From Mobula hypostoma (Eukaryota), in assembly GCF_963921235.1 (NCBI RefSeq), contig NW_026948187.1, positions 3,162,001-3,226,000 on the forward strand: 64,000 nt of DNA, given 5' to 3'. This document shows, in pieces, positions 31,919 through 62,223 of this stretch (its first letter is position 1; the number at the start of each line of letters is the position of its first letter). The notes beneath the pieces were generated by a model. It ran no database searches, had not been told where the DNA came from, and saw only the letters and a list, made by a program, of their open reading frames with translations. Position numbers and translations under genes: made by a program.

Positions 31919-33708
31919 TCATGAGTGCTGTTTGGAATTTGTTGTTTTCATTGGATCTACAGTCCGGTGCTGGTCGCTGATTGCAAATCCAAGCGTGGAG
32001 TCTTTTCGATTGTAGCACTGATTTTTGCTAATGGAAGATGAATCCAACATATTACAGAGGCCTCTGTACTCCGCACAACAGCTGGTTTTCGTAATGAACA
32101 CAAACACTGATCTGCCGTTGTTTTTCACTTGCTCCCTGAATCTGGACTGAGTCGCCACATAAATAAATGTGTTTGTGCAGCAGCTTAAAGATCTCAGCAA
32201 AAATCCAACTTTATAAAATATATATTCAGAATCATTCCATTCGCCTCCTGTTCCTGTTATCTGATAATAGAGGAACTGTGAAAAAGTTGTCAGCCACAGG
32301 GTGATGAAGCTTCCGGAGAGGGTGAGAAGTAAGATCACAGACCTCCTCCTTCTCTCCATCTCCGGGTCACTGCGGTTCTCCGCCTTGCTCTGACCCCTCA
32401 GCCCCTTACGGACGCGACTAGTCACTGAAATGTGTCTGACTGTCAGAGCGTTGAACAGCAGAATCACTGCGAAAGGCAGCAATGAAGTTAGTACCGTGTC
32501 AAACCAGTCAGATCCCTTCCACCCCGGATCAGTGAAGTAACTTAGTTTTATAACATTGAACCACGGTACGTTGTTAATGATTTCTCGCGGTTCAAGCCGG
32601 AAGTGGAAGGGAATGTTTTTCAAATAGAACAACACGGCAGTTGCTGCCAGAACCGCGGCCGCTGTTTTCCCGGTGCAATACTTTGCTTTCAGCTTATGGC
32701 AATAAAGGGAGACAAAGCGATCCAATGTGAAAGTGACAGTGAACCCGACAGAACAGTCTACGGCGACACGGGTCAAGACAACTCTCGCACTCTCCACGGG
32801 AGTAATGTTCAGGACACTCACTGGGAAATAATAAATGCTGATCCGAGACAAAATTACCTCAAAGATAACGACCATCAGATCTGCCGTTGCCATGGCCACC
32901 AAATAGCGAGTGGTGCAAGTGGCCAGACCGCACTTCCTCTGTGACAGGATTGTAATCGACAATATACTCACTAGAAAAACAGAAGTGAGAGGCATTATGG
33001 ATTACAATACATACTTTCAAGAAGTAAAGCCATTGATATATTTAATCAACGAAAACAAACAAAAACTTTGCCCCGGAAGAGTCGATACAGTTTGAGATAA
33101 ATACCTATATCTCTGGATACCGACAATTCAAGTTCTGGGGAATATGGAGGGAGAAAGCGTGTAACCAAAGCAACTGGACACCTTTTACAGCAAGAAGACC
33201 TTGAGAGGGAAGACAAAGTTGTTCAGAAGAAAACACTTTCATTACATGATTACTGTCGCACTGAATACATTTCTGTTTTCATGTGAACTCTATTAGGTGT
33301 CCGTCAAATGAACTGAACAACGTGAACCGTCTCAGTAAAGCCTTCCGATCACTTATCTTTCCTGAGCTGGAGTACGCCAGTGTCGAAAGCGTCAGTGAAG
33401 GGGCTGCTTCGACTTTCAGGTTTACGGTACGTTTAATGCAGTGCTTTGATTCCTGTGACTGAAAGTAATATATAAACAGTGATGGTAACAGTGTGATTGA
33501 ACGAAGTGATATCACCGCACGTGGCTTTGGAAGCTCCTCGCCGATCTCGAAGCCTATCATTTTACAAACCAAACCAAACTCAGAGTAACCTGCACAAAGT
33601 CGGCTAACTCACGGAGTTCCGGTGTTCTTTCATTAGCTTACCAGGAGCGCCAATCAAGACAATGCTGATGTAAAATATTTTCTCCATATGGTAATACGCT
33701 TCAAGCAT
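31919..33708 (-). CDS. GPR139/GPR142-like class A GPCR #1, two exons (33708-33642, 32970-31919), about 372 aa, apparently intact
   Basis: Exon 1 MLEAYYHMEKIFYISIVLIGAP then G|gtaagc; acceptor tttttctag; phase-1 intron of 671 bp. Motifs MATADL, ITPV, TLDRFV, KLKAKYCT, DPEMERRRRS, TLWLT, SCCTNTFIY, SRFREQ. Atypical: N1.50 is Ser, the TM3 Cys is absent (ITPVES), and the C-tail is longer than in the paralogs. Confidence 0.85.
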
Positions 33709-33781
33709 TTTTTTTCTCGCAATTCTCTGGTCCGTTTTAGTTGTAGGACAGTCTCTCTGATTGAAGTTGTACGCCAATGCA

Positions 33782-33810
33782 ATTTATATCCTTTATGAAC
33801 TCCAGTGGGA
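33782..33810 (-). promoter_or_regulatory. Putative core promoter of GPCR #1 (O/E-like site plus TATA)
   Basis: Minus strand TCCCACTGGA, 12 nt, TATAAAT; the TATA starts 80 nt upstream of the ATG. Confidence 0.55.
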
Positions 33811-34299
33811 CAATCGTTCACGACTTCTACCATTGCATTCTAAAAATGTGAGCAAACAGATGACGCCATCTCAGTTAAATCCCGACGTGCCAGGTTATGT
33901 AAATCTCTGAGATCGAATCAGAAGCCCCAGAACGGTCAATCCTGTCATACCAATCGGTTAAATTGCAGGAAATTAATTGCAGTAAATGGGATACCCTTTC
34001 AAATGCCAACATCCCATCGCCATTTCTCATATTATTAGAATGGTATTTCTTCTCCCGATCATTAACAAACTCGTTTTAGCCACCGACATCAGTGCATGAA
34101 CTATATAGCAATGCTATAGTTGAGTCCAGCATTGTGTGTCTGCTTCTTTGATATCTGGCAGATGCAGCATGCCTTTTTTTATGGCTTGCTACTCCACTGT
34201 AAAGTCACTTCCAGGGATGTGTACACCGAAAAAAAGCTTAAATCTTCACAAACAAACAAAAAGAAAATCACTCCCCTTTTCCTCTGATCCGCACTCTGA

Positions 34300-35699: not shown

Positions 35700-37415
35700 T
35701 AATAATTGTGCATGTGTGTTGCCGGAAGGTGGAAGGAAACTAGGAAATGTTTCAAAAAAAAAAGGTAATAATAAAGATATAGAAGATTATAAGGCTAGCA
35801 GGAAGGAGCTTAAGAATTAAATCAGGAGAACCAGAATGGGTCATGAGAAGACCTTGGCGGGCAAGATTAAGAAAACCCCAAAGCATTCTACAAGTATGTG
35901 AAGAGCAAGAGGATATGACATGAGAGAATAGGGCCAATCAAGTGTGACACTGGAGAAGTGTGTATGGAAACGGAGGAGAGAGCAGAGTAATTAATGAATA
36001 CTTTGCTTCAGTATTCTACGGAAAATAATCTTGGCGATTGTAGGGATGACCTACAGCAGACTGAAAAGCTTGATCGTATAAATATTAAGAAAAACGATAT
36101 GTTGGAGCATTTGAAAAGCATTAAGTTGGTTAAGTCACCAAGACCGAACAAGATGTACCCTAGGCTACTGTGGGAAGCGAGGGAGGAAGCTTCTGAGCCT
36201 ATGGCGATGAACTTTCAATCACCAGTGAGGACGGGAGATTTTCCGGAGCATTGGACGGTTGAAGATGTTGTTCCTTTATTCAAGAAAGGGAGTAGCCATA
36301 GCTCAGGAAATTACAGACCAGTGAGTCTTTCTTCAGTGGTTGGTAAGTTGATGGAGAAGATCCTGAGAGGCAGGATTTATGAACATTTGGAGAGGCATAA
36401 TATGATTGGGAATAGTCAACATGGATTTGTCAAAGGCAGGCCGTGGCTTACGAGCCTGATTGATTTTTATTGACGATGTGAATAAATAGATTGATGAAGG
36501 TAGAGCATTAAATGTAGTGTATATATATTTCAGCAAGGCGTTTCTTAAGGTACACCATGGAAGGCATATTGAGAAAGTAAGGAGACATGGGAGGCAAGAG
36601 GACCTTGCTTTCTGGATTCAGAACTGGTTTTCCCACAAAAGACAAAGTGTAGTTGTAAATGGTTCATATTCAGCATGGAGGTCGGTGACCAGTGGTGTGC
36701 CTCAGGGATCTGTTCGTGGACCCCTTCTCTTCTTGATTTAAAAAATGATCTGAAAGAGGAAGTGGAGGGATGGGTGAGTAAATTTGCTGATGACACAATG
36801 CTTGAAGTTGTGGATAGTGTGGAAGATCGTCAAGGTTTAAACGGGACATCGATATGAAACAAAACTGGGCTGAAAAGAGGCAGATGGAGTTCAACCCAGA
36901 TAAGTGTGAGGTGTTTCATTTTGTTATGTCAACCATGATGGCAGAATACAGTATTAATGGTAAGACTTTGGTACTGTGGATGATCAGACGGATCTTCGGG
37001 TCAGGGTCCATAGGACACTCAAAGCTACTGCTCATGTTGACTCTGTGGTTAAGAAGGCATACCGTGCCTTGGCCTTCATCAGCTGTGGGATTGAGTTCAA
37101 GAACCGAGAGGTAATATTGCAGCTATATAGGGCCTTGGTCGGACCTCAGTTGGAGTACTGTGCTCAGTTCTGGTCACCTCATTACAGGAAGGATGTGAAA
37201 ATATAGAAACAGTGCCGAGCAGATTTACAAGGATATTGCCAGGATTGGTGAGCATGCGTTATGAGAATAGGTTGAGTGAACTTGGTCTTTTTTCCTTGGA
37301 GCCACGGAGTATGAGAGGTGACCTGTGCTATATTCTGCCATTGAGAGACATTGATCGTGTGGGTAGTCAGAGGCTTTTTTTTCCCCCAGCGCGGAAGTGA
37401 CTAACACAAGAGGGA
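35700..37415 (+). mobile_element. CR1 LINE ORF2, degenerate
   Basis: GNYRPVSLSSVVGKLME, GVPQGSV, SKFADDT, LEYCAQFWSP. Confidence 0.92.
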
Positions 37416-37514
37416 GCCACAGGTGAGAGCTGAGTGCCAGGTGGGGACCAAAGGTGGACTAACCAACTTAAAAAGGACGCGACATGTTCCTCCACCAGAG
37501 ATGCTGCCAATCCC

Positions 37515-39230
37515 TGATACCCCATACATCCCTAATACAAAGTCGGCATGGTTTCCTTAAGGGAAAATCTTGCCTGTCGAACCTGTTGGAATTTGTTGAG
37601 GATATTAAACATTCGGTACCTAAAGGTGACGCAGTGAATTTATAGCAGGCAGCGAGTGCCCATCCTCCTAATCTGTCTGAGTCCCTCTGCAGCCTACCGG
37701 GTTCCTGAACACTACCCTTCCCTCCACCAATCTCTGTATCATCTACCGTCTCAATCATTGAGATAGAACATAAACAGAAACGGTCCCAGCCGCAACCCCT
37801 GTGGAACACACACTTGCAGGCAACCAGAAAAGGAGCCTTTTATTCCCACTCGCTGCCTCCTACTTGTCAGTTAATGCTCTAAACAGGCCAGTAACTTTCC
37901 TATAATATAACCGGGCCTTAACCTGGTAAGCAGCCTCATGTGTGGCACCTTGTCAAAGGCCTTATGAAAGTCTCAATATCCACGTCCACTGCGTCCCCGT
38001 TAGTATGGCATCATTAATATCCTCAAGAAATTCCAACAGGTTCATCAGACAAAATCTTCCCTTTAGGAACCACGCCGACTTTGCCCTACCTTGTTTTGTG
38101 TGTCGAAGGACTTCATAACTTCATCCTTGACAAATGACTCCAAAATTTTAGCAGCCACTGCTGTCAGGACAACTGATCCACAATTTCCTTTCTGCTGTCT
38201 TCCTGCTTTCTTAAAGAGTACAGCCACATTTCCAATTTTCCAGTTCTCTGCCAGAGTCCACTTAATTGTGAAAAGATAATTACTAATCCCTACACAATCT
38301 TGAGAGCTACTTGAGTCATAACCCGAGAGTGCAGTTCACATGGTCCGGGGGAGTTATGCACTATGAGATCTTTCAGCTTTTTGTGCGCACTCTGCCTTGT
38401 TATAGTAACTGCAATCATGCCCCCCACTCACAGCCTTTAACATCTGGCGCAAAGCTCGTACTTTCCGCTGTGAAGTGTTCTGCAAAATATTCATTTAGTG
38501 CATCTGCCAACTCCGTACCCCTCGTTATCTTTTCTTTGGCCTCATTTCCAGGTCTGCAGCATCATACTAATGAGTCACTTTCCTCCACTGCTCCTGGTTC
38601 ACGACATATTTGCCTTTATTAACAAAAGTTTCAGTTCATGAGTCAGGAAGTACTGCTGCAGCTTTATAAAAGTTTGGTCAGGTTGCATCTGGGATATTGC
38701 ATCTCGTTTCGGTCGCCCCATTGAAGGAAGATGCCGAGCCTTCGGAAAGGGCATAGAAGACTTTCAACAGGAGGAGTTTAGGAGGAGATCTAAACGGAGA
38801 AGTTGCACAATTTTGTATTGTTCTTCGCAGAGTGCTGGAAGCGAAACGGAGACTGAAATGTTTATCCGAGTCGTAAATAAAGTAGACAGTCAGTATCTTT
38901 CTCAGAGCATCAAATACCCAATACCAGAGGGCATGCAGTTAAGGTGAGAGGGGAAAATATTCAAAATACATGTGCAGGAAGTAATTTAGAAGAAAATAAA
39001 ACAAAGAGTTGTGGGGTTCTGGAATGGAGTTCTGGGGTGGAGCTGGAGGTCGGTGAAACGGTGGCATTTATGAGGCTCTTAGGCAAGGAAACACACAGAA
39101 AACGAAGCGATATAGACAACTTGCAGGGAGATGGATTAATTTAATTAGGCATCAGTGGCTTAATTACGTCAGCCCAACATCACAGACCAAAGGGCGCCTT
39201 CATGTCCTGCACTGTTACAGGTTCTAACTA
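37515..39230. mobile_element. Old CR1 fragments in mixed orientation
   Basis: Short plus piece at 37520-37640, minus pieces at 37650-38550 (DDTEIGG...LQRDSDRLGGW), plus 3' end at 38600-39230. Confidence 0.7.
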
Positions 39231-39554
39231 GATAAATGATCACCGACTAAGGACAGTTTCTTTTCCTCTCCGTCCTGAATTTCTATTCCTTCATGATGAA
39301 ACTATGTCCCATGGTAACAGAATCCTAATTGAGGGGAATCATCACTGTAATCGGTCGGAATATTCTCAAAGGATCGATCAATTCTCCTCAAAATTCCAGA
39401 GAATACCGGCCTGGCTCACACAATTTCTCCTCACATACCACCCTGCCATCCCTGGAGCCAGTGCGGACAGTGTGAGCAATAATCCCTACACTCTTGGTGC
39501 TGCAGGGATGACTTTACTGTGGAAATGCGACGAGAGCGGCAAATGATAATTTGA

Positions 39555-41990
39555 GTGGGAAGCTCATACTGTAAAGGGGCTGGATGGTTTGGAGTTTGTT
39601 AAATATGGGCAGGGTAGTTTTTTTTTGTTTGTTTTGTTTTTTTTGCAGCAATACATAGAGGTACCAACTAGAGAAGGGACAGTGTTGGATCTCCTGTTAG
39701 GGAGTGAGATAGGTCAGGTGACGGAGGTTTGTGTTGAGGAACACTTCGGCTCCAGTGATCACAATGCTATTAGTTTCAACATAATTATGCAGAAGGATAG
39801 GTCTGGACCCAAGGTTGAGATTTTTGATTGGAGAAAGGCTAACTTTGAGGAAATGCGAAATGATTTAGAAGGAATAGATTGGAACAATTTGTTTTATGGG
39901 AAGAATAGAATAGAGAAATGGAGGTCATTTAAAGGTGAAATTTTGAGAGTACAGAATCTTTATGTTCCTGTTAGGATGAAAGGAAAGGCTGAAAGTTTGA
40001 GAGAGCGATGGTTTTCAAGGGATATTGGAAACTTGGTTGGGAAAAAGAGAGATATCTACAATAAATACAGGCAGCATGGAGAATATGAGGTGCTCGAGGA
40101 ATATAAAGAATGTAAAAATAATCTTAAGAAAGAAATTAGAAAAGCTAAAAGAAGATATGAGGTTGCTTTGGCAAATAAGGTGAAAATAAATCCCAATGGT
40201 TTCTACGGTTATATTAATAGCAAAAGGATACTGAGGGATAAAACTTATCCCTTAGAGAATCAGAGTGGACAGCTATGTGTGGAGCAAAAAGAGATGGGAG
40301 AGATTCTGAACAATTTATTTTCTTCGGTATTCACTAGGGAGAAGGACATTGAATTGGGTCAAATAAGAGAAGCAGGTAGGGAAGTTATGAAAACTATGAT
40401 GATTAGAGTAGAGGAAGTACTGGAGCTTTTAAAGAATATGAAAGTGAATTAGTCTCCGCGTCCTGACAGGGTATTCCCGAGGAACTTGAGGGAAGTTAGT
40501 GTGCAACGAGCAGGGGCTCTGACAGAAATATTTCAAATATCATTAGAAACGGGTATGGTACCGGAGGATTGGCGCATTGCTCATGTTGTTCCATTGTTTA
40601 AAAAGGATTCTAAGAGTAAACCTAGCAATTATCGACCTGTGAGCTTGACGTCAGTGGTAGGTACATTGATGAAAAGTATTCTTATGGATGGTATATATAA
40701 TTATCTGGATAAACAGGGTCTGGTTAGGAACAGTCAACATGGAGTTTTGTGCGGAAGGTCATGTTTGACAAATCTTATTGAATCTATATGGACTTCAGTA
40801 AGGTCATTAACGAAGTCCCACACGGAAGGTTAGTTGGAAGGTTCAATCGTTAGGTATTAATATTGAAGTAGTAAAATGGATTCGGCAGTGGCTGGATGGG
40901 AGACGCCAGAGAGTGGTGGTAGATAACGGTTTGTCAGATCGGAGTTCCGTGACTAGTGGTGTGCTCAGGGATCTGTACTAGGTCCAATGTTTTTTTTTGT
41001 CATACACAATAATGATTTGGATGATGGGGTGGAAAATTGGATCAGTAAGTATGCAGATGATACTAAGATAGGTGGAGTTGTGGATAATGACGTAGGTTTT
41101 CAAAGCTTGAAGAGAGATTTAGGCCAGTTAGAAGAGTGAGCTGAAAGATGGCAGATGGAGTTTAATGCTGATAAGAGTGAGGTTCTACACTTTTGTAGGA
41201 CTAATCAAAATAGGACATACATGGTAAATGGTAGGGCATTAAAGAATGCAGTAGAACAGAGGGATCTAGGAATAATGGTGCATAGTTCCCCGAAGGTGGA
41301 ATCTCATGTGGATAGAGTGGTGAAGAAAGCTTTTGGTATGCTGGCCTTTATAAATCAGAGCATTGAGTACAGGAGTTACCATGTAATGTTGAAGTTCTAC
41401 AATGCATTGGTGAGGCCAAATTTGGAATATTGTGTACAGTTTTGGTCACCGAATTACAGGAAAGGTGTCAACAAAATGGAGAGAGTCCAGAGAAGGTTTA
41501 CTGAAATGTTGCCTGGGTTTCATCACCTAAGTTACAGAGAAAGTTTGAACAAGTTAGGTCTTTATTCTTTGGAGCGTAGAAGGTTGAGGGTGGACTTGAG
41601 AGCGGTATTTAAAATTATGAGGGGGATAGATAGAGTTGACGTGGATAGGCTTTTTTTTTCCATTGAGAGTGGGGGAGATTCAAACAAGAGGACATGAGTT
41701 GAGAGTTAAAGGACAAAAGTTCAGGGGTAACATGAGGGGTAACTTCTATACTCAGAGAGTGTTAGCTGTGTGGAACGAGCTTCTAGCAGAAGTGGTTGAG
41801 ACAGGTTCGATGTTGTCGTTTAAAGTTAAACTGGATAGATATATGGACAGGAAAGGAATGGAGGGTTATGGGCTGAATGCAGGTCGGTGGGACTCGGTGA
41901 GAGTAAGAGTTCTTCACGGACTAGAAGGGCCGAGATGGCCTGTTTCTGTGCTGTAATTGTCATATGGTTATATATGGTTATGTGGTTATA
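39555..41990 (+). mobile_element. 5'-truncated CR1 LINE with TATGGT-type tail
   Basis: PTREGTVLDLLL, SSDHNAI, NYRPVSLTSVVG, LEYCVQFWSP; tail catatggttatatatggttatgtggtta; small internal deletion near 40785. Confidence 0.93.
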
Positions 41991-41999
41991 ATATTCAAA

Positions 42000-43084: not shown

Positions 43085-43433
43085 NNNNNNNNNNNNNNNN
43101 NNNNNNNNNNNNNNNNNNNNNNNNNNNNNNNNNNNNNNNNNNNNNNNNNNNNNNNNNNNNNNNNNNNNNNNNNNNNNNNNNNNNNNNNNNNNNNNNNNNN
43201 NNNNNNNNNNNNNNNNNNNNNNNNNNNNNNNNNNNNNNNNNNNNNNNNNNNNNNNNNNNNNNNNNNNNNNNNNNNNNNNNNNNNNNNNNNNNNNNNNNNN
43301 NNNNNNNNNNNNNNNNNNNNNNNNNNNNNNNNNNNNNNNNNNNNNNNNNNNNNNNNNNNNNNNNNNNNNNNNNNNNNNNNNNNNNNNNNNNNNNNNNNNN
43401 NNNNNNNNNNNNNNNNNNNNNNNNNNNNNNNNN
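43085..43433. other. Assembly gap (349 N)
   Basis: Run of N about 400 bp upstream of GPCR #2. Confidence 0.98.
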
Positions 43434-43698
43434 AGGAGGAGGTGAAACACTGAAAATTTTAAACCGCTGGGTCAGAAATTAGTACGGTGTCGGTGAAATC
43501 TGTTTACAGATTAATAATTAACCAACAAAAACATGAACCCTGTAAATATGGCTGCTGCGACAGAAAGCTCAGATCTTGTCATAATTCCCACCGCTAACGT
43601 AATACCCAATAATTTGGATATATTTCTATTCAATCTGCCCAATATTTACATCAGAATCAATGGTGTTGAATAAAAGTGTTTGCTCAAGTAATTTGAAC

Positions 43699-43754
43699 TA
43701 ATGACGTTAGTCGGGGTATAACCGTATCTCTCGAGACTGCTCCTTTGTATAAAT
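43699..43754 (+). promoter_or_regulatory. Putative core promoter of GPCR #2 (homeodomain site, O/E-like site, TATA)
   Basis: TAATGA (43699-43704), TCTCTCGAGA (43727-43736), 11 nt, TATAAAT (43748-43754); ATG at 43837. Confidence 0.6.
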
Positions 43755-43836
43755 CAGGGACGTTTTGAAAGCACCAGCTCAGATTTTCTGCCGGCGCTGT
43801 GAATTCAAAAGCATCAGATCACAAATTCGCACTGAA

Positions 43837-50186: not shown

Positions 50187-53100
50187 ATTTGAGATTGCCT
50201 TGGAGCCCTTGAATCGCTCTTCATGATTCACCGGATATATTTGGCATTATTGGTGGGAATGGGACGCATAAGGTATCATTATATGCAGATGACATGTTAC
50301 TGTATATCTCTAATCTGTCCTAACAACTCCTATTATATCCAATTTTGTTTTCTTCCAACCATCCAGAACTGATCAAACTTTTCTTTTATGGAAAACAAAA
50401 GGAATAATATGTTTTCGTGATTTATTCATGGATAATTGTCTCATGTCCTTTGAACAGTTGTCTAATAAATACAATTTGCCTAGATCACATTTTTTCAGGT
50501 ATTTACAGATTAGAAACTTTTTGAAGGTTATTTTACCTACTTTTGCGATATCACCTCAAACTGAAATTTCAGCAAATATTTGAGATTTAACCCCCTATCA
50601 GAAGAGTTTAATAACAATTGTTTATGATTTAATTACGAAAATACCTTTAGGTATGGCTGATAAAATTAAGAATGAATGGGAAAGAGAACTTTAGGCATCT
50701 TTACCGATAGAAAAATGGAAGAAAATTTTCCAACTAGTTAACACTTCCTCAATGTGTGCCAGACACGCTTTGATACAATTTAAGGAGGTTCATAGGGCAT
50801 ATTCTACCTCGTCCCACTGACCTGCACACGGACCATATCCCTCCATACACCTCCCATCCATGTATCTGTCCAATTTATTCTTAAATGTTAATAAAGAACC
50901 CGCATTTACCACCTCATCTGGCAGCTCATTCCATACTCCCACCACTCTCTGTGTGAAGAAGCCCCTCCTAATGTTCCCTTTAAACTTCCCCCCCTCACCC
51001 TTCACCCATGTCCTCTGTTTTTTTCTTCCCTTGCCTCAGTGCAAAAAGCCTGCTTGCATTCACTCTATCTATGCCCATCATAATTTTATATACCTCTATC
51101 AAATCTCCCCTCATTCTTTACGCTGCAGGGAATAAAGTCCTAACCTATTCAACATTTCTCGGTAACTGAGTTTCTCAAGTCCTGGCAACATCCTTGCAAA
51201 CCTTCTCTGCACTCTTTCAACCTTATTTTTATCCTTCCTGTAATTTGGTGACCAAAACTGAACACAATACTCCAGATTCGGCCTCACCAATGCCTTATAC
51301 AACCTCATCATAACATTCCAGCTCTTATACGCAATACCTTGATTAATAAAGGCCAATGTACCAAAAGCTCTCTTTACCACCCTATCTACTTCTGACGCCA
51401 CTTTTAGGGAATTTTGCATCTGTATCCCAGATCCCTCTGTTCTACTGCACTCCTCAGTGCCTTACCATTAACCCTGTATGTTCTACCTTGATTTGTCCTT
51501 CCAACGTGCAATACCTCACGCTTGTCTGTATTAAACTCCATCTGCCATTTTTCAGCCCATTTTTCCAGCTGGTCCAAGTCCCTCTGCAGGCTCCGAAAAC
51601 ATTCCTCATTGTCTACTACACCTCCAATCTTTGTATCATCAGCAAATTTGCTGATCCAATTTACCACATTATCATCCAGATCATTGATATAGATGACAAA
51701 TAACAATGGACCCAGCACTGATCCCTGTGGCACACCACGAGTCACAGGCCTCCACTCAGAGAAGCAATTCTCTACCACCACTCTTTGGCTTCTTCCATTG
51801 AGCCAATGTCCAATCCAATTTACCACCTCTCCATGTATACCTAGCGACTGAATTTTCCTAACTAACCTCCGATGCGGGACCTTGTCAAAGGCCTTGCTGA
51901 AATCCATGTAGACAACATCCACTGCCTTCCCTTCATCCACTTTCCTGGTAACCTCCTCGAAAAACTCCAATAGATTGGTCAAACATGACCTGCCACGCAC
52001 AAAGCCATGTTGACTCTCGCTAATAGGTCCCTGTCTATCCAAATGCTTGTAGATTCTGTCTCTTAGTACTCCCTCCAATAACTTACCTACTACCGCCGTT
52101 AAACTCACTGGCCTGTAATTTCCCGGATTACTTTTCGATCCTTTTTTTAAACAACGGAACAACATGAGCCACGCTCCAATCCTCCGGCACCTCACCCGGA
52201 GACAGCGACATTTTTAATGTTTCTGCCAGGGCCCCCACAATTTCAACACTAGTCTCCTTCAAGGTCCGAGGGAACACCCTGTCAGGTCCTGGAGACTTAT
52301 CCACTTTAATTTTCCTCAGGACAGCAAGCACCTCCTCCTTTTCAATCTGTACAGTTTCCATGATCTCACTACTTTTTTCCCTCAATTCCATAGACTTCAT
52401 GCCAGTTTCCTTAGTAAATACAGACGCAAAAAACCTATTTAAGATCTCCCCCATTTCCTTTGGTTCTGCACATAGCCGACCACTCTGATCTTCAAGAGGA
52501 CCAATTTTATCCCTTACAATCCTTTTGCTCTTAATATAGCTCTAAAAGCTCTTTGGATTATCCTTCACTTTGACTGCCAAGGCAACCTCATGTCTTCTTT
52601 TAGCCCTCCTGATTTCTTTCTTAAGTATTTTCTTGCACTTCTTATACTCCTCAAGCACCTGATTTACTCCGTTTCCTATACATTTCATACAACTCCCTCT
52701 TCTTCTTTTTCAGAGTTGCAATATTCCTTGAGAACCAAGGTTCCTTATTCCTATTCAATTTGCCTTTAATCCTGACAGGAACATAAAAACTCTGCACTCT
52801 CAAAATTTCCCCTTTGAAGGCTTCCCACCTACCAATCACATCTTTGCCAGAGAACAACCTGTCCGAATCCAAGCTTTTTAGATCCTTTCTCATTTCTTCA
52901 AAGTTGACCTTCTTCCAGTTCAGAACCTCAACCCTAGGACCAGATCTATCCTTGTCCATGATCAAAATGAAACTAATGAAACATTTTTGATATTATTTCA
53001 GTATTTTTGCGGATTAATTTACAACCTCATCGTATTACTGCAATTTTTTTGTACTACCAGTGATGGACTCTAGTCATTTATCCCCTTCAGCTTGTCGTTT

Positions 53101-53632
53101 GATTGCATTTGTTACATTAATATCCAGAAGATCCGTTTTTTCAATGGAAAGATTCTAATCCCCCTACTACATATCAATGGTTTTCCCCAAACTATAACAT
53201 GTTTAAATTTGTAAAAAAAAAAAAATTAGGAGTGGTACTATCGAGCCTCGGTTAAATTTGAAAAAAAAACTGGAGGCCATTTATTCAGCATTTTCATATG
53301 ATGTAACCTGACCTTTTCCAACTTTTTTAATTAACTTTTTGTTTGTGTATAGAGGAGCGGAGTTAATGACAAATAATGATTTTAGCCGATGAAATATGGC
53401 ATCCCAGTCTTTTTTTTGTTTTGTTTTTTTTTAGTGTAGCGGGTAAAAACTTGTTTGAATTTTTTTCATGTTCAGTTAATAAGAGATTGGGAGGTTTAAA
53501 TTAAACATGTTACTCGGACTCTGTGTCTGAATACGTTAACCGTTGTCATTGTAATCCCGATCTCTTTGTATTATTATCATTGTTATGTTTATCCATTTGA
53601 AACTCAATATAAAAGATTGAAACAGAAAGAAA
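50187..53632 (+). mobile_element. 5'-truncated, internally deleted L1, split by a CR1
   Basis: FEIALEPL, HKVSLYADDMLLYISN, LIQFK..HRA; the 3' part from about 52979 parallels 10080-10696 and ends aatataaaagattgaaacagaaagaaa. Confidence 0.85.
50788..52978 (-). mobile_element. CR1 ORF2 segment lacking a 3' tail
   Basis: ORFs 52651-52965, 52128-52454, 51404-52195 (PQGSVLGP, KFADD), 51111-51419, 50790-51005. Confidence 0.93.
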
Positions 53633-53709
53633 GGACGTAGAAACCTTCAGAGAAAGGATTACTGAGTTACAGTATCAGAGAGGTACGGGCTTGATGCATA
53701 TGAAACAGT

Positions 53710-56700
53710 GAGAGTAGGAATGCAATGAGGTGGAGGATAAATGCGTGGCTGAGGGATTGGAGCAGGGGGAAGGGATTCAAGTTTTTGGATCATTGGGGCC
53801 TCTTTTGGCGCAGGCGTGACCTGTACAAAAAGGATGGGTTACACTTGAATCCTAGGGGGACCAATATCCTGGCGGGGAGATTAGCGGGGGCTACTGAGGT
53901 GACTTTAAACTAGAATGGTTGGGGGGTGGGAATCAAATTAAAGAGGCTAGGCGTGAGGAGGTTAGTTCACAACAGAGGGATGGGAACCAGTGTAGAGAGA
54001 CAGAGGGGTGTAAAGTGAGGGTAGAAGCAAAAAGTACAAAGGAGAAAAGTAAAAGTGGCAGGCCGACAAATCCAGGGCAAACATTAAAAAGGGCCACTTT
54101 TAAAAATAATTGTATAAGGGCTAAGAGAGTTGTAAAAGAGCGCCTGAAGGCTCTATGTGTCAATGCAAGGAGCATTCGTAATAAGGTGGATGAATTGAAA
54201 GTGCAGATTGTTATTCAGGATTATGATATAGTTGGGATCACAGAGACATGGCTCCAGGGTGACCAGGGATGGGAGCTCAACGTTCAGGGATATTCAATAT
54301 TCAGGAGGGATAGACATGAAGGAAGGGGAGGTGGGGTGGCGTTGCTGGTTAAAGAAGAGATTAATGCAATAGAAAGGAAGGACATAAGCCGGGAAGATGT
54401 GGAATCGATATAGGTAGAGCTGCGTAACACCAAGGGGCAGAAGACGCCGGTGGGAGCTGTGTACAGGCCACCTAACAGTAGTAGTGAGGTCGGAGATGGT
54501 ATTAAACAGGAAATTAGAAATGTGTGCAATAAAGGAACAGCAGTTATAATGGGTGACTTCAATCTACATGTAGACTGGGTGAACCAAATTGGTAAAGGTG
54601 CTGAGGAAGAGGATTTCTTGGAATGTATGCGGGATGGTTTTTTGAACCAACATGTCGAGGAACCAACTAGAGAGCAGGCTATTCTGGACTGGGTTTTGAG
54701 CAATGAGGAAGGGTTAATTAGCGATCTTGTCGTGAGAGGCCCCTTGGGTAAGAGTGACCATAATATGGTGGAACTCTTCATTAAGATGGAGAGTGACATA
54801 GTTAATTCAGAAACAAAGGTTCTGAACTTAAAGAGGGGTAACTTTGAAGGTATGATACGTGAATTAGCTAAGATAGACTGGCAAATGACACTTAAAGGAT
54901 TGACGGTGGATATGCAATGACAAGCATTTAAAGGTTGCATGGATGAACTACAACAATTGTTCATCCCAGTTTGGCAAAAGAATAAATCAAGGAAGGTAGT
55001 GCACCCGTGGCTGACAAGAGAAATTAGGGATAGTATCAATTCCAAAGAAGAAGCATACAAATTAGCCAGAGAAAGTGGCTCACCTGAGGACTGGGAGAAA
55101 TTCAGAGTTCAGCAGAGGAGGACAAAGGGCTTAATTGGGAAGGGGAAAAAGATTATGAGAGAAAACTGGCAGGGAACATAAAAACGGACTGTAAAAGCTT
55201 TTATAGATATGTAAAAAGGAAAAGACTGGTAAAGACAAATGTAGGTCCCCTGCAGACAGAAACAGGGGAATTGATTATGGGGAGCAAGGACATGGCAGAC
55301 CAATTGAATAGTTACTTTGGTTCTGTCTTCACTAAGGAGGACTTAAATAATCTTCCAGAAATAGTAAGGGACAGAGGGTCCAGTGGGATGGAGGAACTGA
55401 GCGAAATACATGTTAGTAGGGAAGTGGTGTTAGGTAAATTGAAGGGATTGAAGGCAGATAAATCCCCAGGGCCAGATGGTCTGCATCCTAGAGTGCTTAA
55501 AGAAGTAGCCCAAGAAATAGTGGATGCATTAGTGATAATTTTTCAAAACTCGTTAGATTCTGGACTAGTTCCTGAGGATTGGAGGGTGGCTAATGTAACC
55601 CCACTTTTTAAAAAAGGAGGGAGAGAGAAACTGGGGAATTATAGATCGGTTAGCCTAACGTCGGTAGTGGGGAAACTGCTGGAGTCAGTTATCAAGGATG
55701 TGATAACAGCACATTTGGAAAGCGGTGAAATGATCGGACAAAGTCAGCATGGATCTGTGAAAGGAAAATCATGTCTGACGAGTCTCATAGAATTTTTTGA
55801 GGATGTAACTAGTAGAGTGGATAGGGGAGAACCAGTGGATGTGGTATATTTGGATTTTCAAAAGGCTTTTGACAAGGTCCCACACAGGAGATTAGTGTGC
55901 AAACTTAAAGCACACGGTATTGGGGATAAGGTATTGGTGTGGGTGGAGAATTGGTTAGCAGACAGGAAGCAAAGAGTGGGAATAAACGGGACCTTTTCAG
56001 AATGGCAGGCGGTGACTAGTGGGGTACCGCAAGGCTCAGTGCTGGGACCCCAGTTGTTTACAATATATATTAATGACTTGGATGAGGGAATTAAATGCAG
56101 CATCTCCAAGTTTGCGGATGACACGAAGCTGGGTGGCAGTGTTAGCAGTGAGAAGGATGCTAAGAGGATGCAGGGTGAGTTGGATAGGTTGGGTGAGTGG
56201 GCAAATTCATGGCAGATGCAATTTAATGTGGATAAATGTGAAGTTATCCACTTTGGTGGCAAAAATAGGAAAACAGATTATTATCTGAATGGTGGCCGAT
56301 TAGGAAAAGGGGAGGTGCAACGAAACCTGGGTGTCATTATACACCAGTCATTGAAAGTGGGCATGCAGGTACAGCAGGCGGTGAAAAAGGCGAATGGTAT
56401 GCTGGCATTTATAGCGAGAGGATTCGAGTACAGGAGCAGGGAGGTACTACTGCAGTTGTACAAGGCCTTGGTGAGACCACACCTGGAGTATTTTGTGCAG
56501 TTTTGGTCCCCTAATCTGAAGAAAGACATCTTTGCCATAGAGGGAGTACAAAGAATGTTCACCAGATTGATTCCTGGGATGGCGGGACTTTCATATGAAA
56601 AAAGACTGGATGAATTGGGCTTGTACTCGTTGGAATTCAGAAGATTGAGGGGGGATCTGATTGAAACGTATAAGATCCTAAAGGGATTGGACAGGCTAGA

Positions 56701-57049
56701 TGCAGGGAGATTGTTCCCGATGTTGGGGAAGTCCAGAACGAGGGGTCACAGTTTGAGGATAGAGGGGAAGCCTTTTAGGACCGAGATTAGGAAAAACTTC
56801 TTCACACAGAGAGTGGTGAATCTGTGGAATTCTCTGCCACAGGAAACTGTTGAGGCAAGTTCATTGGCTATATTTAAGAGGGAGTTAGAAATGGCCCTTG
56901 TGGCTACGGGGGTCAGGGGGTATGGAGGGAAGGCTGGGGCGGGGTTCTGAGTTGGATGATCAGCCATGATCATAATAAATGGCGGTGCAGGCTCGAAGGG
57001 CCGAATGGCCCACTCCTGCACCTATTTTCTATGTTTCTATGTTTCTATG
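53710..57049 (+). mobile_element. Young CR1 LINE: end of esterase-type ORF1 plus almost intact ORF2
   Basis: LYKKDGLHLN (SGNH esterase DxxH block); NARSI, ITETWL, MGDFN, SDHN; 559-aa RT ORF with FADD; (TTCTATGT)n tail; TSD TATGAAACAGT (53699-53709) / TATGAGACAGT (57046-57056). Confidence 0.95.
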
Positions 57050-57812: not shown

Positions 57813-58046
57813 CCCAAACTTCTGTTGCATCTGTACTTACCCAAACTTCTGTTGTATCTGTACTTACCCAAACTTCTGTTGTATCTGTACTTATCCAAAC
57901 TTCTGTTGCATCTGTACTTATCCAAACTTCTGTTGTATCTGTACTTATCCAAACTTCTGTTGTATCTGTACTTATCCAAACTTCTGTTGTATCTGTACTT
58001 ACCCAAACTTCTGTTGTATCTGTACTTACCCAAACTTCTGTTGCAT
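57813..58046. repeat. 27-bp minisatellite, about 8.7 copies, within a CR1 3'-end remnant (57705-57840, minus)
   Basis: Unit CCAAACTTCTGTTGYATCTGTACTTAY, preceded by acacagcacagaaacaggcc...cccattgacctgcacc. Confidence 0.93.
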
Positions 58047-58659
58047 GTGTAGCCGAGTAGGCTTGTCCGCACGTTCGTCTAGGGAAACCAGCTTTCGGCC
58101 CCGCCAAAACAGAGCATTCAAACTGGGGCGGATGTTGTGTAAATACCCCAGTACAAACTCACAACGCAAATTTCAGACAGTACGCAATAACCGAGTCAAT
58201 GATTACACTTTATAACTCTTATTTTGTTGTGTGGTTAGCAGAGAAACAAAATATAAAAGGCAAAAGCGCCACTCTTATTAAAGTTAACATTTCGTGCACA
58301 AAATCCTCCTTTAACGACCTCCGCCGAAACGCCGCCATTCTCCGGACGCTCGAATTCCCATATTCTCCGTCTGCTGAACACCGAGCGCTCCCCGCACTCG
58401 TTCTTCCTCTTTCCTCCCCTCGACCGAAAGCCCGCGAGCAAACTCGGTTCCCAGACATATAAGATAGAATAACATGTCTCCCATTGGTTAGTTTCCCGTT
58501 ATCTGTAAGTATAACCCAAACATCGCAGCTACAGAGAAACCAGTACATCAGCAGTTAGCATTACAGGGAAGCCACTACAGTAGTCTTAGCAGTTAACATT
58601 ACTGAGAACCCTACACATGTCGTAATCAATCCTCCGCTCGTTAGTCCCGAAGCCAGCCT

Positions 58660-59160
58660 GTTCCACTCTCACCACCCGCATGTTCCCCTTAAGAATTTCA
58701 CCTTGCACCCTTAACCTCCGACCATTAGTCCCACCCAGCCTCAGTGGGAAAGAACATGCTTACAATTACCCTATCCAACCCCTAAAAATCTCTATGAACT
58801 CATTCAATTTCATTGCTATCTTTCCTTCCGAAAGGTGACCAGGACTGCACACAATACGCCTAATCGGCCTCACTGACGTCTTATTCAACTCCAACATAAC
58901 ATCTCATCTCCGATACTCAATACCTTGACCTATGAAGGTCAATGTACCAAAAGTTCTCTTTACCACCCTGTCGACCTGTGATGACACTTTCGGGAGATTA
59001 TGGATCTCTATTCCCGGATCCCTCTGTTCCACCGTACTCATCGGTGCCCCAACATTCAACGTGTAAGCCTCTCAAAGTGCAATGGCTCGCAGTTCCCTGC
59101 ATGAAATTCCATCTACCACTTTTCAGCTCAATTTTCCGGCTGGTCCAAAGACTCTAAGTG
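58660..59160 (-). mobile_element. Old CR1 3' fragment
   Basis: Parallels 50930-51590 (ggcctcac...aatgtaccaaaag.tctctttaccaccct). Confidence 0.75.
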
Positions 59161-61320
59161 ACTCTAACAGATTTTCGGGAAGTCTGATAAATTTAGAACT
59201 CACGCCAATGACATTAAATCTGTGATAAGTCTGAAGGAACGAGCTGTTCCAGAGTTTTAAGTCTACAGATCCCCATAGGTAAAACACTAAAGAATATGAG
59301 CTGTATTTCCCCCGCGTTTCTTTACCCAGACCGGGGTGAGAACAGAACGGCTTCCTGGATGTAACAGATTCCCGGAGCCACTGAACGATGAATTCCCAGC
59401 CCAACATTTCCATATAAACTGAAATGCATGCTTCCTTTAATTACACGAGACACGGTGCATAAGAACAGAGACATGATATTGTTGTACATCGTTCTACTCA
59501 ATTATCTGTGTAATCATTGGAGTTTCATGGAACAAAACGCCAGACACAGTTCCACTGTATCTCGGTACACGTGAGAGGACTAATCCGAAACCAGCACGAA
59601 ACCGATGAGCCGGATAGGTGTGTGACCGCTGTAGCGAAACACCCTGAGGCTGAGAGGATCGCGATTATCGACAGATGATAACCAGTTTGTAATTACCCCA
59701 CGCAAGGAGGCGTCAGCATCCAGGCACCACAGATGGTTCTGAAGTACAGCGAACACAGAGAATATCGGATCGCTTTGTTCCTCACCGGGTGAGTTGCTGC
59801 AGATCTGAAACCGATTGCGTGAGCACCCGGCGGCGGCAGAGAGTCTGACAGTTCAGAAGGATCTGGGTGAACATTTGGATAGAAGGGGCGTAAAAGTTTC
59901 GCCATCCACTTCTAGTCAGGGAGAACACCTTACCGGAAATGACGTGCCGCCGTTTCGTACTCTGTGAACTTGCGAACCTGTGATATCCAAGTAGCCGTTC
60001 ACTTCTCACTGTGGTCCGGACAAGGGAACTCTATGTGAGCGGCCTGATCTGTCCACGGACTGTGACTCCCCCATGGTGGGGAGACTGATTCAGATATGAT
60101 CTCCAGGTGGATGGAATTGGAATCGGTTTAATATTGTCACATGTACTGAGATGCTGTGAAAATTCAGTCCTGTGTACAGTTCAAATCATTATATAGAGCC
60201 GTGAAGTAGAATAAACAGAAAAAGGTCAAACAGTTACAATTCTGAATAAAATGTAACAACCACAGAAACACTGAACAACAAGTCTACAAAAAAGGAGGAA
60301 AATCACAACGGAATAAACTGGGAGGTGAAGAGTCCATATTATCGTGCTCGGGATCATTTCAACAATATTTTATCAGCAGAGCAGAAGACCTGCCCGAGCC
60401 TGTAGTTATGTGTTTTCTGTACTCTGTAGCTTTACTCGCGCGTTCCTGATCTTTTCCAGAAAACAGTTCCTCGGTCAGTTCTCCTTCCTCTCTGCTCAGA
60501 GAGACACATTCAGTGACACAGTTTCGGTCTAATCCGGCCTCTGTGATAGAGGCAACCCGTAGAGTTTCGGCTCTCTTCAACCAGCCGCGTTCGATAAAAC
60601 CTGATAGCGGTAGTGCTCTAAAAAAAAATTGTTAAGTTTATCACCACTCAGGACCGTAAAAACGAACAATGTAGCTGCGACAGACAGACAAAGCTGGAAG
60701 ATCTGTACCAACACCTGTTCTTTTACCCAGGCCCTGCAATAGCCCTGTCGGGAGAGACTGCAAATGCAATGCAAATCCCTCGACATGTCTGTCCCCGGAT
60801 GTCGCTGCGGCCAAGTTAATACTAAAAATAACCGAGAGCAAGTGCACCCCACATTGCGGATTGGCATTCGCATTTCCTCACCACTAACATCGATTTTTCA
60901 AACTTCTCTTAACATTGTGATTGCATGATGTTTCTGGAATGCTATGATTTATCAGAGCGATACCCGTGACAAGAGCTAATTTCCAGTATGACCTGCGAGC
61001 TGGTTGAACCGGACCGTTCGCACTCACTGTTAAACGGGAGAGGTTTCACGGTGGAGCGGAGCAGTACGGCTGAAACAGGCGAACAGAACTGTGGCGCTGA
61101 TCTACACTAACAAATATAGGTCGTTCCACTGGGGAAGAGAGGGGGGATATAAACTGGTGAATGCAGGAAAAAAAGATTAAAATGATCGTCAGTGAACCAG
61201 AGCGAGCAATCATGCTGGCGAGGAATGAGATAAACAAGGAGAACGCCTGGCTTCATTGGTGCAGAGATTGTTTGCAATGGGTGGTGAATTATTTGGGCCA
61301 GGCAGGGAAACATCACTAAT

Positions 61321-62223
61321 TCATGACATCCTTGCAGCAATGAGAGCCAGGGGATGTTTTATCACGTCCTTCAGTTGCTCCCTGAACTTGGTCTGGGTGA
61401 CGGCGTAAAAAGCCGTGTTTGTGCAGCAGCTCAGAATCTGCAGCATCGAGCCCAGTCCTCGCAGAGAATCAGCAGGAAGCGTCACAGCAGAGAAAGCAGA
61501 CAGTCGGTTCCAAGCAGAATACACAGTGAACGGTGCCCACAGCAGGACGAAATTGCTAGAGATGATCAGCAGTAAAACGAGTGATTTTCTGCGGCTCTCC
61601 ATCTCCGGGTCTCTGGCACTCTGTCCCTTGTCAGCACGCCGGAGTCTCCTGCGCCCTCTGCTGGTGACTAAAACGTACCGGATGGTTAATCCATTCGTCA
61701 GGAGGACCAGCAGGAATGGGATTACAGGAGTCTAGAAGGTAATTAAATAAGTCAATTGACATTGCGACAAATAAAGACACATAATCTGCGGTATCTACAC
61801 AAATAAATGGAGCAATCAGCATTGCATAATATCCCGAGAGTCGAAAATACCAGTAAATGTTCCTTAAACAGCTGATCGCAGTCACTGTCCCCAGCATCAC
61901 AGCCGCAGTTCTCCCGGTGCAATATTTTGTTTTCAGCTTCTGGCAACAAATGGCCACAAACCGGTCAAATGTGAAAGTGACGGTGAACCAGACCGAACAA
62001 TCGGTGGCGGCGTAAAGCAGGACGGCGTGGATTTGACACACTGGTGTGTCCGCAGCCCAGATGAGAAGTTCAATTGGCGCGTAAATATTCGGAATCTTGT
62101 TCAGTATCAGGTCCAGGACAACAACCATAAGATCGGCCGCTGCCATGGCAACTAGGTAGCGAGTGACAACTCTGGAGAGACCGCACTTTCCTCTGGACAA
62201 GATTAAAATTGTCACCAGGTTCA
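61321..62223 (-). pseudogene. GPR139/GPR142-like GPCR #3, exon 2 with a 1-bp insertion; exon 1 not found in the window
   Basis: Acceptor cttcttgcag|TG AAC (VNLVTILILSRGKCGLS); TFDRFVAICCQKLKTKYCT. An extra base near 61732 shifts LL-TPVIPF; the second frame gives RDPEMESRRKS, LLWAP, LSCCTNTAFY, KFREQ, with stop at 61323-61321. Confidence 0.88.

What the first reader, a model, noticed from the sequence alone, without database searches (positions are those of the whole stretch)
31919..62223. Cluster of divergent GPR139/142-like receptors: candidate unrecognised chemosensory repertoire of cartilaginous fish
Seen: three paralogous 7-TM genes within about 31 kb in mixed orientation. All have an acceptor just before TM1 position 1.50, and the phase-1 intron is confirmed in the two genes with a visible exon 1. 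Those two have only about 10 residues before TM1. Cytoplasm-facing motifs are strongly conserved (S..KCGL, MA.ADL, DRFV, KLK.K.CT, D.EME.RR.S, FRE), while ECL1, ECL2 and ECL3 are barely alignable. Two of the three carry disabling lesions. Established: mammalian GPR139 and GPR142 are single-copy receptors activated by aromatic amino acids (L-Trp, L-Phe), and chondrichthyans have very small OR, TAAR and V1R repertoires. Inference: clustering, birth-and-death, minimal N-termini and variable outer faces are the pattern expected of a sensory receptor family, for example for amino acids or peptides in water. The expansion itself may already appear in automated annotations; the function is the open question.
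Basis: partly seen in the sequence, partly recalled or inferred. Interest (0 to 1): 0.85.

Follow-up and report, generated by a model that had tools for sequence, protein, structure and literature searches.

The report
Expanded GPR139-like receptor family, sharks and rays
Three neighbouring receptor genes (one open but oddly mutated, two broken) belong to a very large family of GPR139-related receptors that I found only in sharks and rays and in no paper I could search; its ligand pocket varies enormously while its signalling face and promoter stay fixed, which is the pattern of a sensory or otherwise ligand-diverse repertoire, but its tissue and ligands are still unknown.

Summary
The window carries three two-exon class-A GPCR paralogues, 41-47% identical to one another. 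Gene A (31919-33708, minus strand) has an open frame. Gene B (43837-45859, plus strand) has one in-frame TGA. Gene C (61321-62223, minus strand) has one frameshift, and its exon 1 is not in the window. The assembly gap lies 404 bp upstream of gene B's ATG and touches no coding sequence.

All three belong to a large family that public annotations call "probable GPR139". Every named member I saw is a shark or a ray. It forms one clade, sister to a single-copy amphibian/sturgeon orphan, so these are not GPR139/142 orthologues.

In this family the positions matching GPR139's ligand contacts are the most variable in the protein. In the single-copy sister groups the same positions are the most conserved. 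The GPR139/142 hallmark Arg/Lys at 6x51 is lost. The inner face and a roughly 100-bp promoter module are conserved. Gene A looks relaxed: it departs at 10 of 91 near-invariant columns.

This supports a ligand-diverse receptor repertoire. A chemosensory role is plausible but untested, because no RNA data could be reached, and amino-acid sensing in the GPR139 manner is not supported. First-stage notes flag similar clusters about 26 times elsewhere in this genome. I found no paper describing the family.

The parts
33783..33858 (-). Gene A core promoter module: TGTTTGCTCA, an A/T-rich box, the TCCCACTGGAG palindrome-like box, 12 bp, then TATAAAT
   Evidence: The composite occurs only twice in the window (0.08 expected by chance). 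It aligns with the upstream regions of four Rhinoraja paralogues.
33642..33708 (-). Gene A exon 1 (22 codons plus 1 base; N-terminus and the outer part of TM1)
   Evidence: tblastn hit with the orthologue's N-terminus, followed by a GT donor.
31919..32970 (-). Gene A exon 2, from TM1 position 1.50 to the stop. The frame is open, but N1.50 is S, W3x41 is G, both disulfide cysteines are lost, and the C-terminal tail is about 50 aa longer than in the orthologues
43085..43433 (.). Assembly gap, intergenic, upstream of the gene B promoter
   Evidence: No family homology on either flank.
43677..43753 (+). Gene B core promoter module: TGTTTGCTCA, the TCTCGAGA palindrome, 11 bp, then TATAAAT
43837..43906 (+). 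Gene B exon 1 (23 codons plus 1 base)
44931..45859 (+). Gene B exon 2. Pseudogene by a single in-frame TGA at 45737-45739; the frame continues to a normal C-terminus
61321..62223 (-). Gene C exon 2. Pseudogene by one frameshift at about 61725-61745. Exon 1 lies outside the window or is lost
35994..41956 (+). LINE debris (reverse-transcriptase-like ORFs) between genes A and B
   Evidence: translations. One search confirms the same kind of element at other window positions.
51111..56950 (.). Two LINE copies (RT on the minus strand at 51404-52195; APE endonuclease plus RT on the plus strand at 53919-56950) between genes B and C

Best explanation
The three genes are local members of a large multigene family of class-A GPCRs. 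Every named member I saw comes from a shark or a ray. The family arose from one ancestral jawed-vertebrate gene of the GPR139 superclade, whose single-copy descendants survive in amphibians and sturgeon.

Each gene is a compact two-exon unit. It has its own TATA promoter carrying a family-specific module, almost no extracellular N-terminus, and a phase-1 intron just before TM1 position 1.50.

How it most likely works (inferred). The ligand enters a transmembrane pocket roofed by an ECL2 beta-hairpin, and the residues lining that pocket differ from paralogue to paralogue. The signal passes through a nearly invariant inner face (DRF, KLKTKYCT in ICL2, RVRKGLRG...DPEMESRRKS in ICL3, NTFIY, FRE in helix 8) to one shared transducer. 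The family is therefore many detectors wired to one output, switched on by one shared promoter logic.

In this window the family is dying. B and C each carry one recent disabling lesion, and A is open but evolving fast at conserved sites.

My odds: about 0.8 that this is a functional ligand-diverse repertoire, and about 0.4 that the cells expressing it are chemosensory (olfactory, oral, or skin/solitary chemosensory cells).
For: Family size and spread:
- 960 proteins at E<=1e-3. The best 120 include 116 named shark or ray proteins plus one unnamed metagenome contig and three UniRef-only entries; about 65 are distinct Heterodontus proteins, on about 20 different contigs.
- 114 clusters at 50% identity reach E<=1e-30.
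- Deep-branching members are also sharks or rays.

Phylogeny and gene structure:
- The family is one clade (95/85), sister to the amphibian+sturgeon group (100/99), then to a group found from sharks to reptiles (98/94).
- The intron position and phase are shared with Xenopus and Seriola relatives.

Pocket and inner face:
- 24 positions homologous to GPR139 ligand contacts (PMC8807744, PMC5430874) average 2.81 bits, against 2.13 for other outer-half TM positions (p=9e-5) and 1.26 for the inner half.
- In the sister groups the same positions are the most conserved (0.66 against 1.19; 0.18 against 0.54).
- ICL1 averages 0.89 and ICL2 1.41 bits, against 3.02 for ECL3.

Selection: omega is 0.17-0.35 on the inner face, 0.27-0.67 on the outer face, and pocket dN approaches dS.

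Promoter: the module is shared by genes A and B (41% identical proteins) and by four skate paralogues.

Structure: the AF2 model has pLDDT 93 with an ECL2 hairpin, and its top structural match is GPR139, followed by peptide receptors.

Decay in this window: lesions in B and C. Gene A departs at 10 of 91 near-invariant columns (family median 1, maximum 6) and has about twice the lineage rate of its orthologue (p=0.0075).
Against: - There is no expression evidence of any kind. The only runs holding the locus are fragmentary contigs with no splice joint.
- No ligand is known.
- True vertebrate GPR139 and GPR142 were not in my tree, so the position of the whole superclade relative to them is open.
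- Pocket positions were transferred from human GPR139 by ungapped offsets from anchor residues.
- The lower synonymous divergence on the inner face means that part of its conservation may come from gene conversion rather than from selection on the protein.
- Two or three of the three local genes are dead or dying, so this locus by itself shows no function.
[quoted passage not shown] This is weak evidence, since chemoreceptor transcripts are never abundant.
Confidence: 0.7

Rival explanations
1. The family is an internal receptor repertoire rather than an exteroceptive one. For example it could sit on leukocytes (chemoattractant-like or peptide-fragment receptors) or on neurons and endocrine cells, and bind a diversified set of endogenous or pathogen-derived peptides.
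For: After GPR139, the nearest folds are peptide receptors (opioid, neurotensin, somatostatin, CCK, galanin), and the model has the ECL2 beta-hairpin typical of peptide-binding class-A receptors. The catshark study reports that most catshark OR, TAAR and ORA genes are expressed most highly outside the nose, some in spleen (PMC11979771). A first-stage note places another cluster of this family beside a TCR-beta V array (not checked). A promoter with forkhead-like, E-box-like and EBF-like boxes fits lymphoid cells as well as olfactory neurons (my own knowledge).
Against: Among vertebrate class-A GPCRs, families of more than a hundred genes with a hypervariable pocket are mostly chemosensory or somatosensory (my own knowledge). 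No matching expansion of endogenous ligands is known. There is no expression evidence either way.
Confidence: 0.25
2. The family is mostly a neutral by-product of segmental or LINE-associated duplication in repeat-rich DNA. On this reading its apparent conservation is kept up by gene conversion, and few or no members are functional.
For: In this window two genes are broken and the third is aberrant, and all are embedded in LINE debris. Synonymous divergence is two to three times lower in the inner-face coding segments, with runs of 37-40 identical codons between skate paralogues.
Against: Motifs, intron position and promoter are conserved between sharks and rays, and between paralogues only 41% identical. 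Omega is well below 1 (0.17-0.35) on the inner face. Hundreds of open reading frames are annotated in a dozen species. The pattern of pocket variation is non-random.
Confidence: 0.05
3. These are ordinary GPR139/GPR142 orthologues or recent duplicates, sensing L-Trp/L-Phe as the mammalian receptors do.
For: The RefSeq name is 'probable GPR139'. GPR139 is the best solved-structure match by sequence (E 4e-14 for a typical member, 4.5e-6 for gene A) and by fold. The YY...G.P|xN start of TM1 is shared.
Against: Identity to GPR139 is only about 20%. Arg 6x51 is reported to occur only in GPR139/142 and to be critical for ligand recognition (PMC8807744). It is T, Q and F in the three genes, and 6x51 is the most variable of the pocket positions tested (3.8 bits) in the family, whereas the sister groups keep R (117/118) or K (21/21). 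The nearest relatives are other non-mammalian orphans, and sharks keep their own single-copy orthologue of one of those (P0287).
Confidence: 0.03

Closest known systems
GPR139 (and its close homologue GPR142), mammalian orphan receptors activated by L-Trp/L-Phe
   Same: GPR139 is the best solved-structure match by sequence and by fold. Shared features are the YY...G.P-x-N start of TM1, the A-A-D motif in TM2, the S.W.TV...DR. motif in TM3, W6x48, a TM7 NxxxY motif without proline, a very short N-terminus, and LRG in ICL3.
   Different: Identity is about 20%. The family is multi-copy, not single-copy. Arg 6x51 and the acidic wall (2x61, 3x29, 7x35) are not kept. The family has the canonical C3x25-ECL2 cysteine pair and an ECL2 about 11 residues longer. 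It is not an orthologue.
Single-copy orphan of amphibians and sturgeon, annotated 'probable GPR139' (P0232, P0405-P0424)
   Same: It is the sister clade of the family (100/99). Identity is 32-33%. The phase-1 intron sits at the same codon (Xenopus).
   Different: It is single-copy, and its pocket positions are almost invariant (0.18 bits), with K at 6x51 in 21 of 21 sequences. The family promoter module is absent from the 240 bp upstream of the Xenopus ATG.
Single-copy orphan found from sharks to reptiles, next to TMEM183A (P0234 coelacanth, P0287 catshark, teleosts, amphibians, reptiles). It may be the 'GPR210' clade of Rinne et al. 2019 (PMC6504862)
   Same: It is the next-closest clade (98/94), with the same intron position and phase (Seriola).
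   Different: It is conserved one-to-one, including in sharks, and keeps R6x51, E2x61, D3x29 and D7x35. The equation with GPR210 is my guess from the paper's description; I did not check it by accession.
Vertebrate chemoreceptor multigene families of class-A type (OR, TAAR, V1R/ORA, T2R), and the MRGPR family of sensory neurons
   Same: A large lineage-specific family in clusters, pseudogenes, a hypervariable pocket against a conserved transducer face, and a minimal N-terminus.
   Different: It has a different ancestry (the GPR139 superclade). Its coding region is split by an intron, whereas those families are mostly single-exon (my own knowledge). Expression in sensory cells has not been shown.

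Membership tests
GPR139/GPR142 subfamily | Orthology: falls within the GPR139 or GPR142 clade | tested here: inconclusive
   The family's nearest relatives are other orphan groups. GPR139 itself matches at only E 4e-14 and 20% identity. True GPR139/142 sequences could not be put into the tree.
GPR139/GPR142 subfamily | Arg at 6x51, reported to occur only in GPR139/142 and to be critical for ligand recognition (PMC8807744) | tested here: not met
   Genes A, B and C have T, Q and F. Position 6x51 is the most variable of the 24 pocket positions tested in 72 family rows (3.8 bits: Y13, N10, F6, T5...).
GPR139/GPR142 subfamily | Other ligand-contact residues F3x33, H5x43 and N7x38 (PMC5430874) | tested here: not met
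   A has R/D/F, B has F/H/G and C has Y/N/S at 3x33/5x43/7x38. All three positions vary by 2.9-3.2 bits in the family.
GPR139/GPR142 subfamily | Single copy per genome | tested here: not met
   Three copies lie in 30 kb here, and about 65 distinct Heterodontus proteins are among the best 120 hits.
GPR139/GPR142 subfamily | Activation by L-Trp/L-Phe | not testable with these tools
   This needs a cell assay.
Rhodopsin-like (class A) GPCR | 7tm_1 profile, seven helices, D2x50, a DRY-type motif, W6x48 and a TM7 NxxxY motif | tested here: met
   Pfam 7tm_1 above cut-off for A, B and the first part of C. AF2 model with seven helices plus helix 8, pLDDT 93. DRF, W6x48 and NTFIY are present. Gene A alone lacks N1.50 (it has S).
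Chemosensory receptor multigene family (as a kind) | Large lineage-specific family in genomic clusters with pseudogenes | tested here: met
   First-stage notes flag about 26 further clusters in this genome (not checked).
Chemosensory receptor multigene family (as a kind) | Ligand-contact positions hypervariable while the transducer face is conserved | tested here: met
   2.81 against 2.13 (p=9e-5) against 1.26 bits, with the opposite pattern in the single-copy sister groups.
Chemosensory receptor multigene family (as a kind) | Expression in sensory cells, typically one or a few receptors per cell | not testable with these tools
   No RNA run holds the locus and the contigs laid show no splice joint. 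Supplements of the two catshark papers held no entry.
Chemosensory receptor multigene family (as a kind) | Response to external chemical cues | not testable with these tools
   This needs heterologous expression and ligand screening.

The most novel reading that the evidence does not exclude
Sharks and rays, thought to be poor in class-A chemoreceptors, may carry a chemosensory receptor family of their own that is missing from the literature I could search. It would number in the hundreds of genes, be built from a GPR139-like ancestor, and be driven by one shared compact promoter module. A coding block (TM5-ICL3) conserved at the nucleotide level might also serve in gene regulation or receptor choice. 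If so, it would be a further vertebrate chemoreceptor family and part of the answer to how elasmobranchs smell or taste with a handful of ORs, TAARs and V1Rs.
Probability: 0.35. Interest if true: 0.88.

Novelty: new variant of a known kind. Interest (0 to 1): 0.64.

Why it matters
Published surveys describe cartilaginous fishes as poor in GPCRs and in olfactory receptors: 2 OR plus 6 OR-like genes and 3 TAARs in the catshark (PMC11979771), and a 'relative paucity' of GPCRs (PMC8455134). Here is a class-A family with over a hundred 50%-identity clusters across sharks and rays. It appears in databases under inconsistent automatic names (GPR139, vasopressin V2-like, capa receptor-like, CCR3-like, mu-opioid-like), and none of my nine literature searches found it discussed.

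Its sequence pattern is what one expects of a repertoire that reads many different ligands through one output. The question of what it senses is now directly testable, because the genes, a diagnostic promoter module and the pocket positions are all defined.

It is also a clean natural experiment. One ancestral gene stayed single-copy with a frozen pocket in amphibians and sturgeon, and exploded with a free-running pocket in elasmobranchs.

Tried and rejected
Expression:
- The look-up of sequencing runs gave only three small runs of one study, none on record as RNA (the first attempt was busy).
- Laying them gave short contigs, no splice joint, and coverage running into the 3' flank, so they say nothing about transcription.
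- Two short contigs carrying family members (ENA and JGI metagenomes) hold exon 2 only and are not transcripts.

Literature:
- Nine searches found no paper on this expansion.
- The supplements of the two catshark sensory papers held nothing, or no match.

Gene C exon 1: neither tblastn nor a scan for ATG...G.P plus a phase-1 donor found it in 62224-64000.

A dN/dS test on the gene A branch was therefore impossible, and I used a protein relative-rate test instead. It is significant with P0006 as outgroup (p=0.0075) but not with the subfamily consensus as outgroup (p=0.33).

True GPR139/GPR142 sequences: none was returned as a usable protein id, so the tree is rooted on ghrelin/NMU-like receptors and amphioxus GPR139-like proteins.

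'O/E-like' reading of the promoter palindrome: no copy matches TCCCNNGGGA exactly (consensus recalled from my own knowledge). I leave the factor unnamed.

Rejected readings:
- That the ORFs across the N gap are real (they come from translating N).
- That the genes are GPR139/142 orthologues.

Full report
**1. What is in the window.**
ORF listing and Pfam show three rhodopsin-type receptor genes. Reading the DNA and running tblastn with full-length homologues fixed their structures.

- Gene A (minus strand): exon 1 is 33708-33642, a 671-bp intron follows, and exon 2 is 32970-31919.
- Gene B (plus strand): exon 1 is 43837-43906 and exon 2 is 44931-45859.
- Gene C (minus strand): exon 2 is 62223-61321.

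In A and B the intron is phase 1 and splits the codon just before TM1 position 1.50. C has the same acceptor. Exon 1 of C is not in the remaining 1.8 kb, which is unsurprising because a skate paralogue has a 12.4-kb intron.

B has a single in-frame TGA at 45737-39. C has a single frameshift near 61725-61745. Both read on to normal C-termini, so each died recently, or the lesion is a polymorphism or an assembly error. No further copy or fragment is in the window.

The N gap (43085-43433) is intergenic, 404 bp upstream of gene B's ATG. It affects only the estimate of distance. Between the receptors lie LINE reverse-transcriptase and endonuclease remains, and upstream lies a 13-finger C2H2 array.

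**2.
The motifs it named are present in all three genes. The three are 41-47% identical overall. Identity is 51-62% on the inner face, 24-30% in the outer halves of the helices, 19-39% in the extracellular loops and 14-18% at pocket positions.

**3. What family this is.**
A word-indexed search returned 960 proteins. The best 120 include 116 named shark or ray proteins, plus one unnamed metagenome contig and three UniRef-only entries. Most are called 'probable GPR139', and about 65 of them are distinct Heterodontus francisci proteins on about 20 contigs. An exhaustive HMMER search of 50%-identity representatives found 114 clusters at E<=1e-30, followed by a sharp drop. The deepest-branching members are also sharks or rays. 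Their names are inconsistent (V2 receptor-like, capa receptor-like and others), which is the mark of an uncharacterised family. I saw no chimaera, though this was not an exhaustive test.

The nearest outsiders are two conserved single-copy orphan groups:
- One is found in amphibians and sturgeon.
- One is found from sharks to reptiles, often fused in gene models to TMEM183A.

A careful maximum-likelihood tree makes the elasmobranch family one clade (95/85). It is sister to the amphibian/sturgeon group (100/99), then to the shark-to-reptile group (98/94), with amphioxus GPR139-like proteins outside. All three clades have GPR139 as their best solved-structure match, but only at E 1e-13 to 1e-18. 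The phase-1 intron at the same codon is present in Xenopus and Seriola members of the two sister groups, so the gene structure is ancestral.

Rinne et al. 2019 named a 'GPR210' orphan near GPR139/142 in coelacanth, gar and other fishes. They did not include sharks. It may correspond to one of these sister groups.

**4. Test of the 'variable outer face'.**
I took the 24 positions reported to contact ligands in human GPR139. I transferred them by offsets from the anchor residues, using the HMMER alignment.

| Group | Pocket positions | Other outer-half TM positions | Inner-half TM positions |
|---|---|---|---|
| Elasmobranch family (72 near-full-length rows) | 2.81 bits | 2.13 bits (p=9e-5) | 1.26 bits |
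| Shark-to-reptile group | 0.66 bits | 1.19 bits | 0.92 bits |
| Amphibian/sturgeon group | 0.18 bits | 0.54 bits | 0.57 bits |

In the two single-copy sister groups, then, the same pocket positions are the most conserved.

Position 6x51 is the clearest case. Its Arg is reported to occur only in GPR139/142 and to be critical for ligand recognition, and in the docked model it interacts with the ligand's carboxylate (PMC8807744). It is R in 117 of 118 shark-to-reptile sequences and K in 21 of 21 amphibian/sturgeon sequences. In the elasmobranch family it is the most variable of the pocket positions tested (3.8 bits), and genes A, B and C have T, Q and F.

So the pocket was released from constraint, or driven to diversify, after the expansion. 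Nothing points to amino acids in particular.

Nei-Gojobori estimates on five skate paralogues and gene A give omega 0.17-0.35 for the inner face and 0.27-0.67 for the outer face. Pocket dN approaches the local dS. This is suggestive, but the sample is too small for a claim of positive selection.

**5. Structure.**
An AlphaFold model of the closest homologue of gene A is confident (pLDDT 93.3). It shows seven helices, helix 8, almost no N-terminal tail and a beta-hairpin in ECL2. Foldseek ranks GPR139 first, followed by peptide receptors.

**6. Promoter.**
A first-stage note on this stretch claimed a shared promoter module, and I tested it. The composite TGTTTGC-N(40-70)-TATAAA occurs exactly twice in 64 kb. 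Both copies lie 75-85 nt upstream of the ATGs of A and B, with 0.08 expected by chance.

Aligned with the upstream regions of four skate paralogues, about 100 bp are conserved:
- (GTCATC)TGTTTGC;
- an ATTTTTA...GTTGAAAC box;
- a GTCCCnnnGGAG-type palindrome;
- 10-12 bp of spacer, then TATAAA.

The exact TGTTTGC...TATAWA composite is found in two of those four skate loci; the other two carry variant boxes. It is not seen upstream of the Xenopus or Seriola relatives. Which factors bind is unknown. 'O/E-like' is not justified by the sequences.

**7. Is gene A alive?**
Its frame is open. Yet it departs from the consensus at 10 of 91 columns that are at least 95% conserved in its subfamily; the family median is 1 and the maximum is 6. 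The departures include N1.50S, W3x41G and C3x55Y. It has also lost both disulfide cysteines; the TM3 cysteine loss is shared with P0001 and the ECL2 cysteine loss with both P0001 and P0006. It reads about 50 residues past the usual stop. Its lineage carries 38 unique changes against 18 in the Hemitrygon sequence (p=0.0075), although the contrast fades when the subfamily consensus is the outgroup. I rate it as relaxed, and possibly non-functional.

**8. What could not be done.**
There is no RNA evidence. No open-access paper describes the family. The two catshark sensory studies do not mention it, and their supplements hold no match.

**9. Verdict.**
The evolutionary signature of a ligand-diverse repertoire is now supported by a quantitative contrast with the single-copy sister groups, by a shared promoter, and by family size. 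The chemosensory function remains an inference (about 0.4), with an internal peptide or immune role as the main rival. The same kind of cluster was flagged by first-stage readers about 26 times elsewhere in this genome. Those notes are unchecked.

Noticed in passing
window 32283-32456 (ICL3 coding part of gene A); L001-L005 exon 2, codons about 150-200: The TM5-ICL3 coding block is conserved at the nucleotide level. Skate paralogues share runs of 37-40 identical codons (permutation p<0.001). Synonymous divergence is two to three times lower in inner-face segments than in outer ones. Contigs from paralogues pile up on exactly this part of gene A. The cause could be gene conversion or an exonic cis element; it is unexplained.
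   Followed up: partly
window 33783-33858 (-) and 43677-43753 (+); L001-L004 about 9830-9930: A family-specific core promoter module is shared by deep paralogues and by a skate. It consists of a forkhead-like TGTTTGC box, an A/T box, a palindrome and TATAAA. The binding factors are unknown.
   Followed up: yes
proteins P0234, P0287-P0404 (not in the window): A single-copy orphan receptor lies next to TMEM183A in sharks, sturgeon, teleosts, amphibians and reptiles. It keeps the GPR139/142 hallmark R6x51 and the acidic residues at 2x61, 3x29 and 7x35. No mammal or bird appeared in the hit list. It may be an uncharacterised third member of the amino-acid-sensing GPR139/142 group.
   Followed up: partly
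window 31919-32970 (gene A); proteins P0001, P0006: Gene A has lost both cysteines of the conserved TM3-ECL2 disulfide pair. The TM3 cysteine is also lost in its Hemitrygon relative (P0001), and the ECL2 cysteine is lost in both P0001 and the Pristis relative (P0006). The ECL2 loss is therefore a lineage trait and not private decay of gene A.
   Followed up: partly
window 20615-22202: An array of 18.9 copies of an 84-bp unit encodes a 13-finger C2H2 zinc-finger ORF (20912-22033, plus strand).
   Followed up: partly
window 57813-58051: A 27-bp tandem repeat, 8.9 copies at 96% identity, produces long spurious ORFs on both strands.
   Followed up: no
window 7703-9304, 25288-26067, 35994-41956, 51111-56950: There are several LINE copies (RVT_1, Exo_endo_phos) in both orientations. 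The longest open RT ORF is 559 aa (55271-56950).
   Followed up: partly
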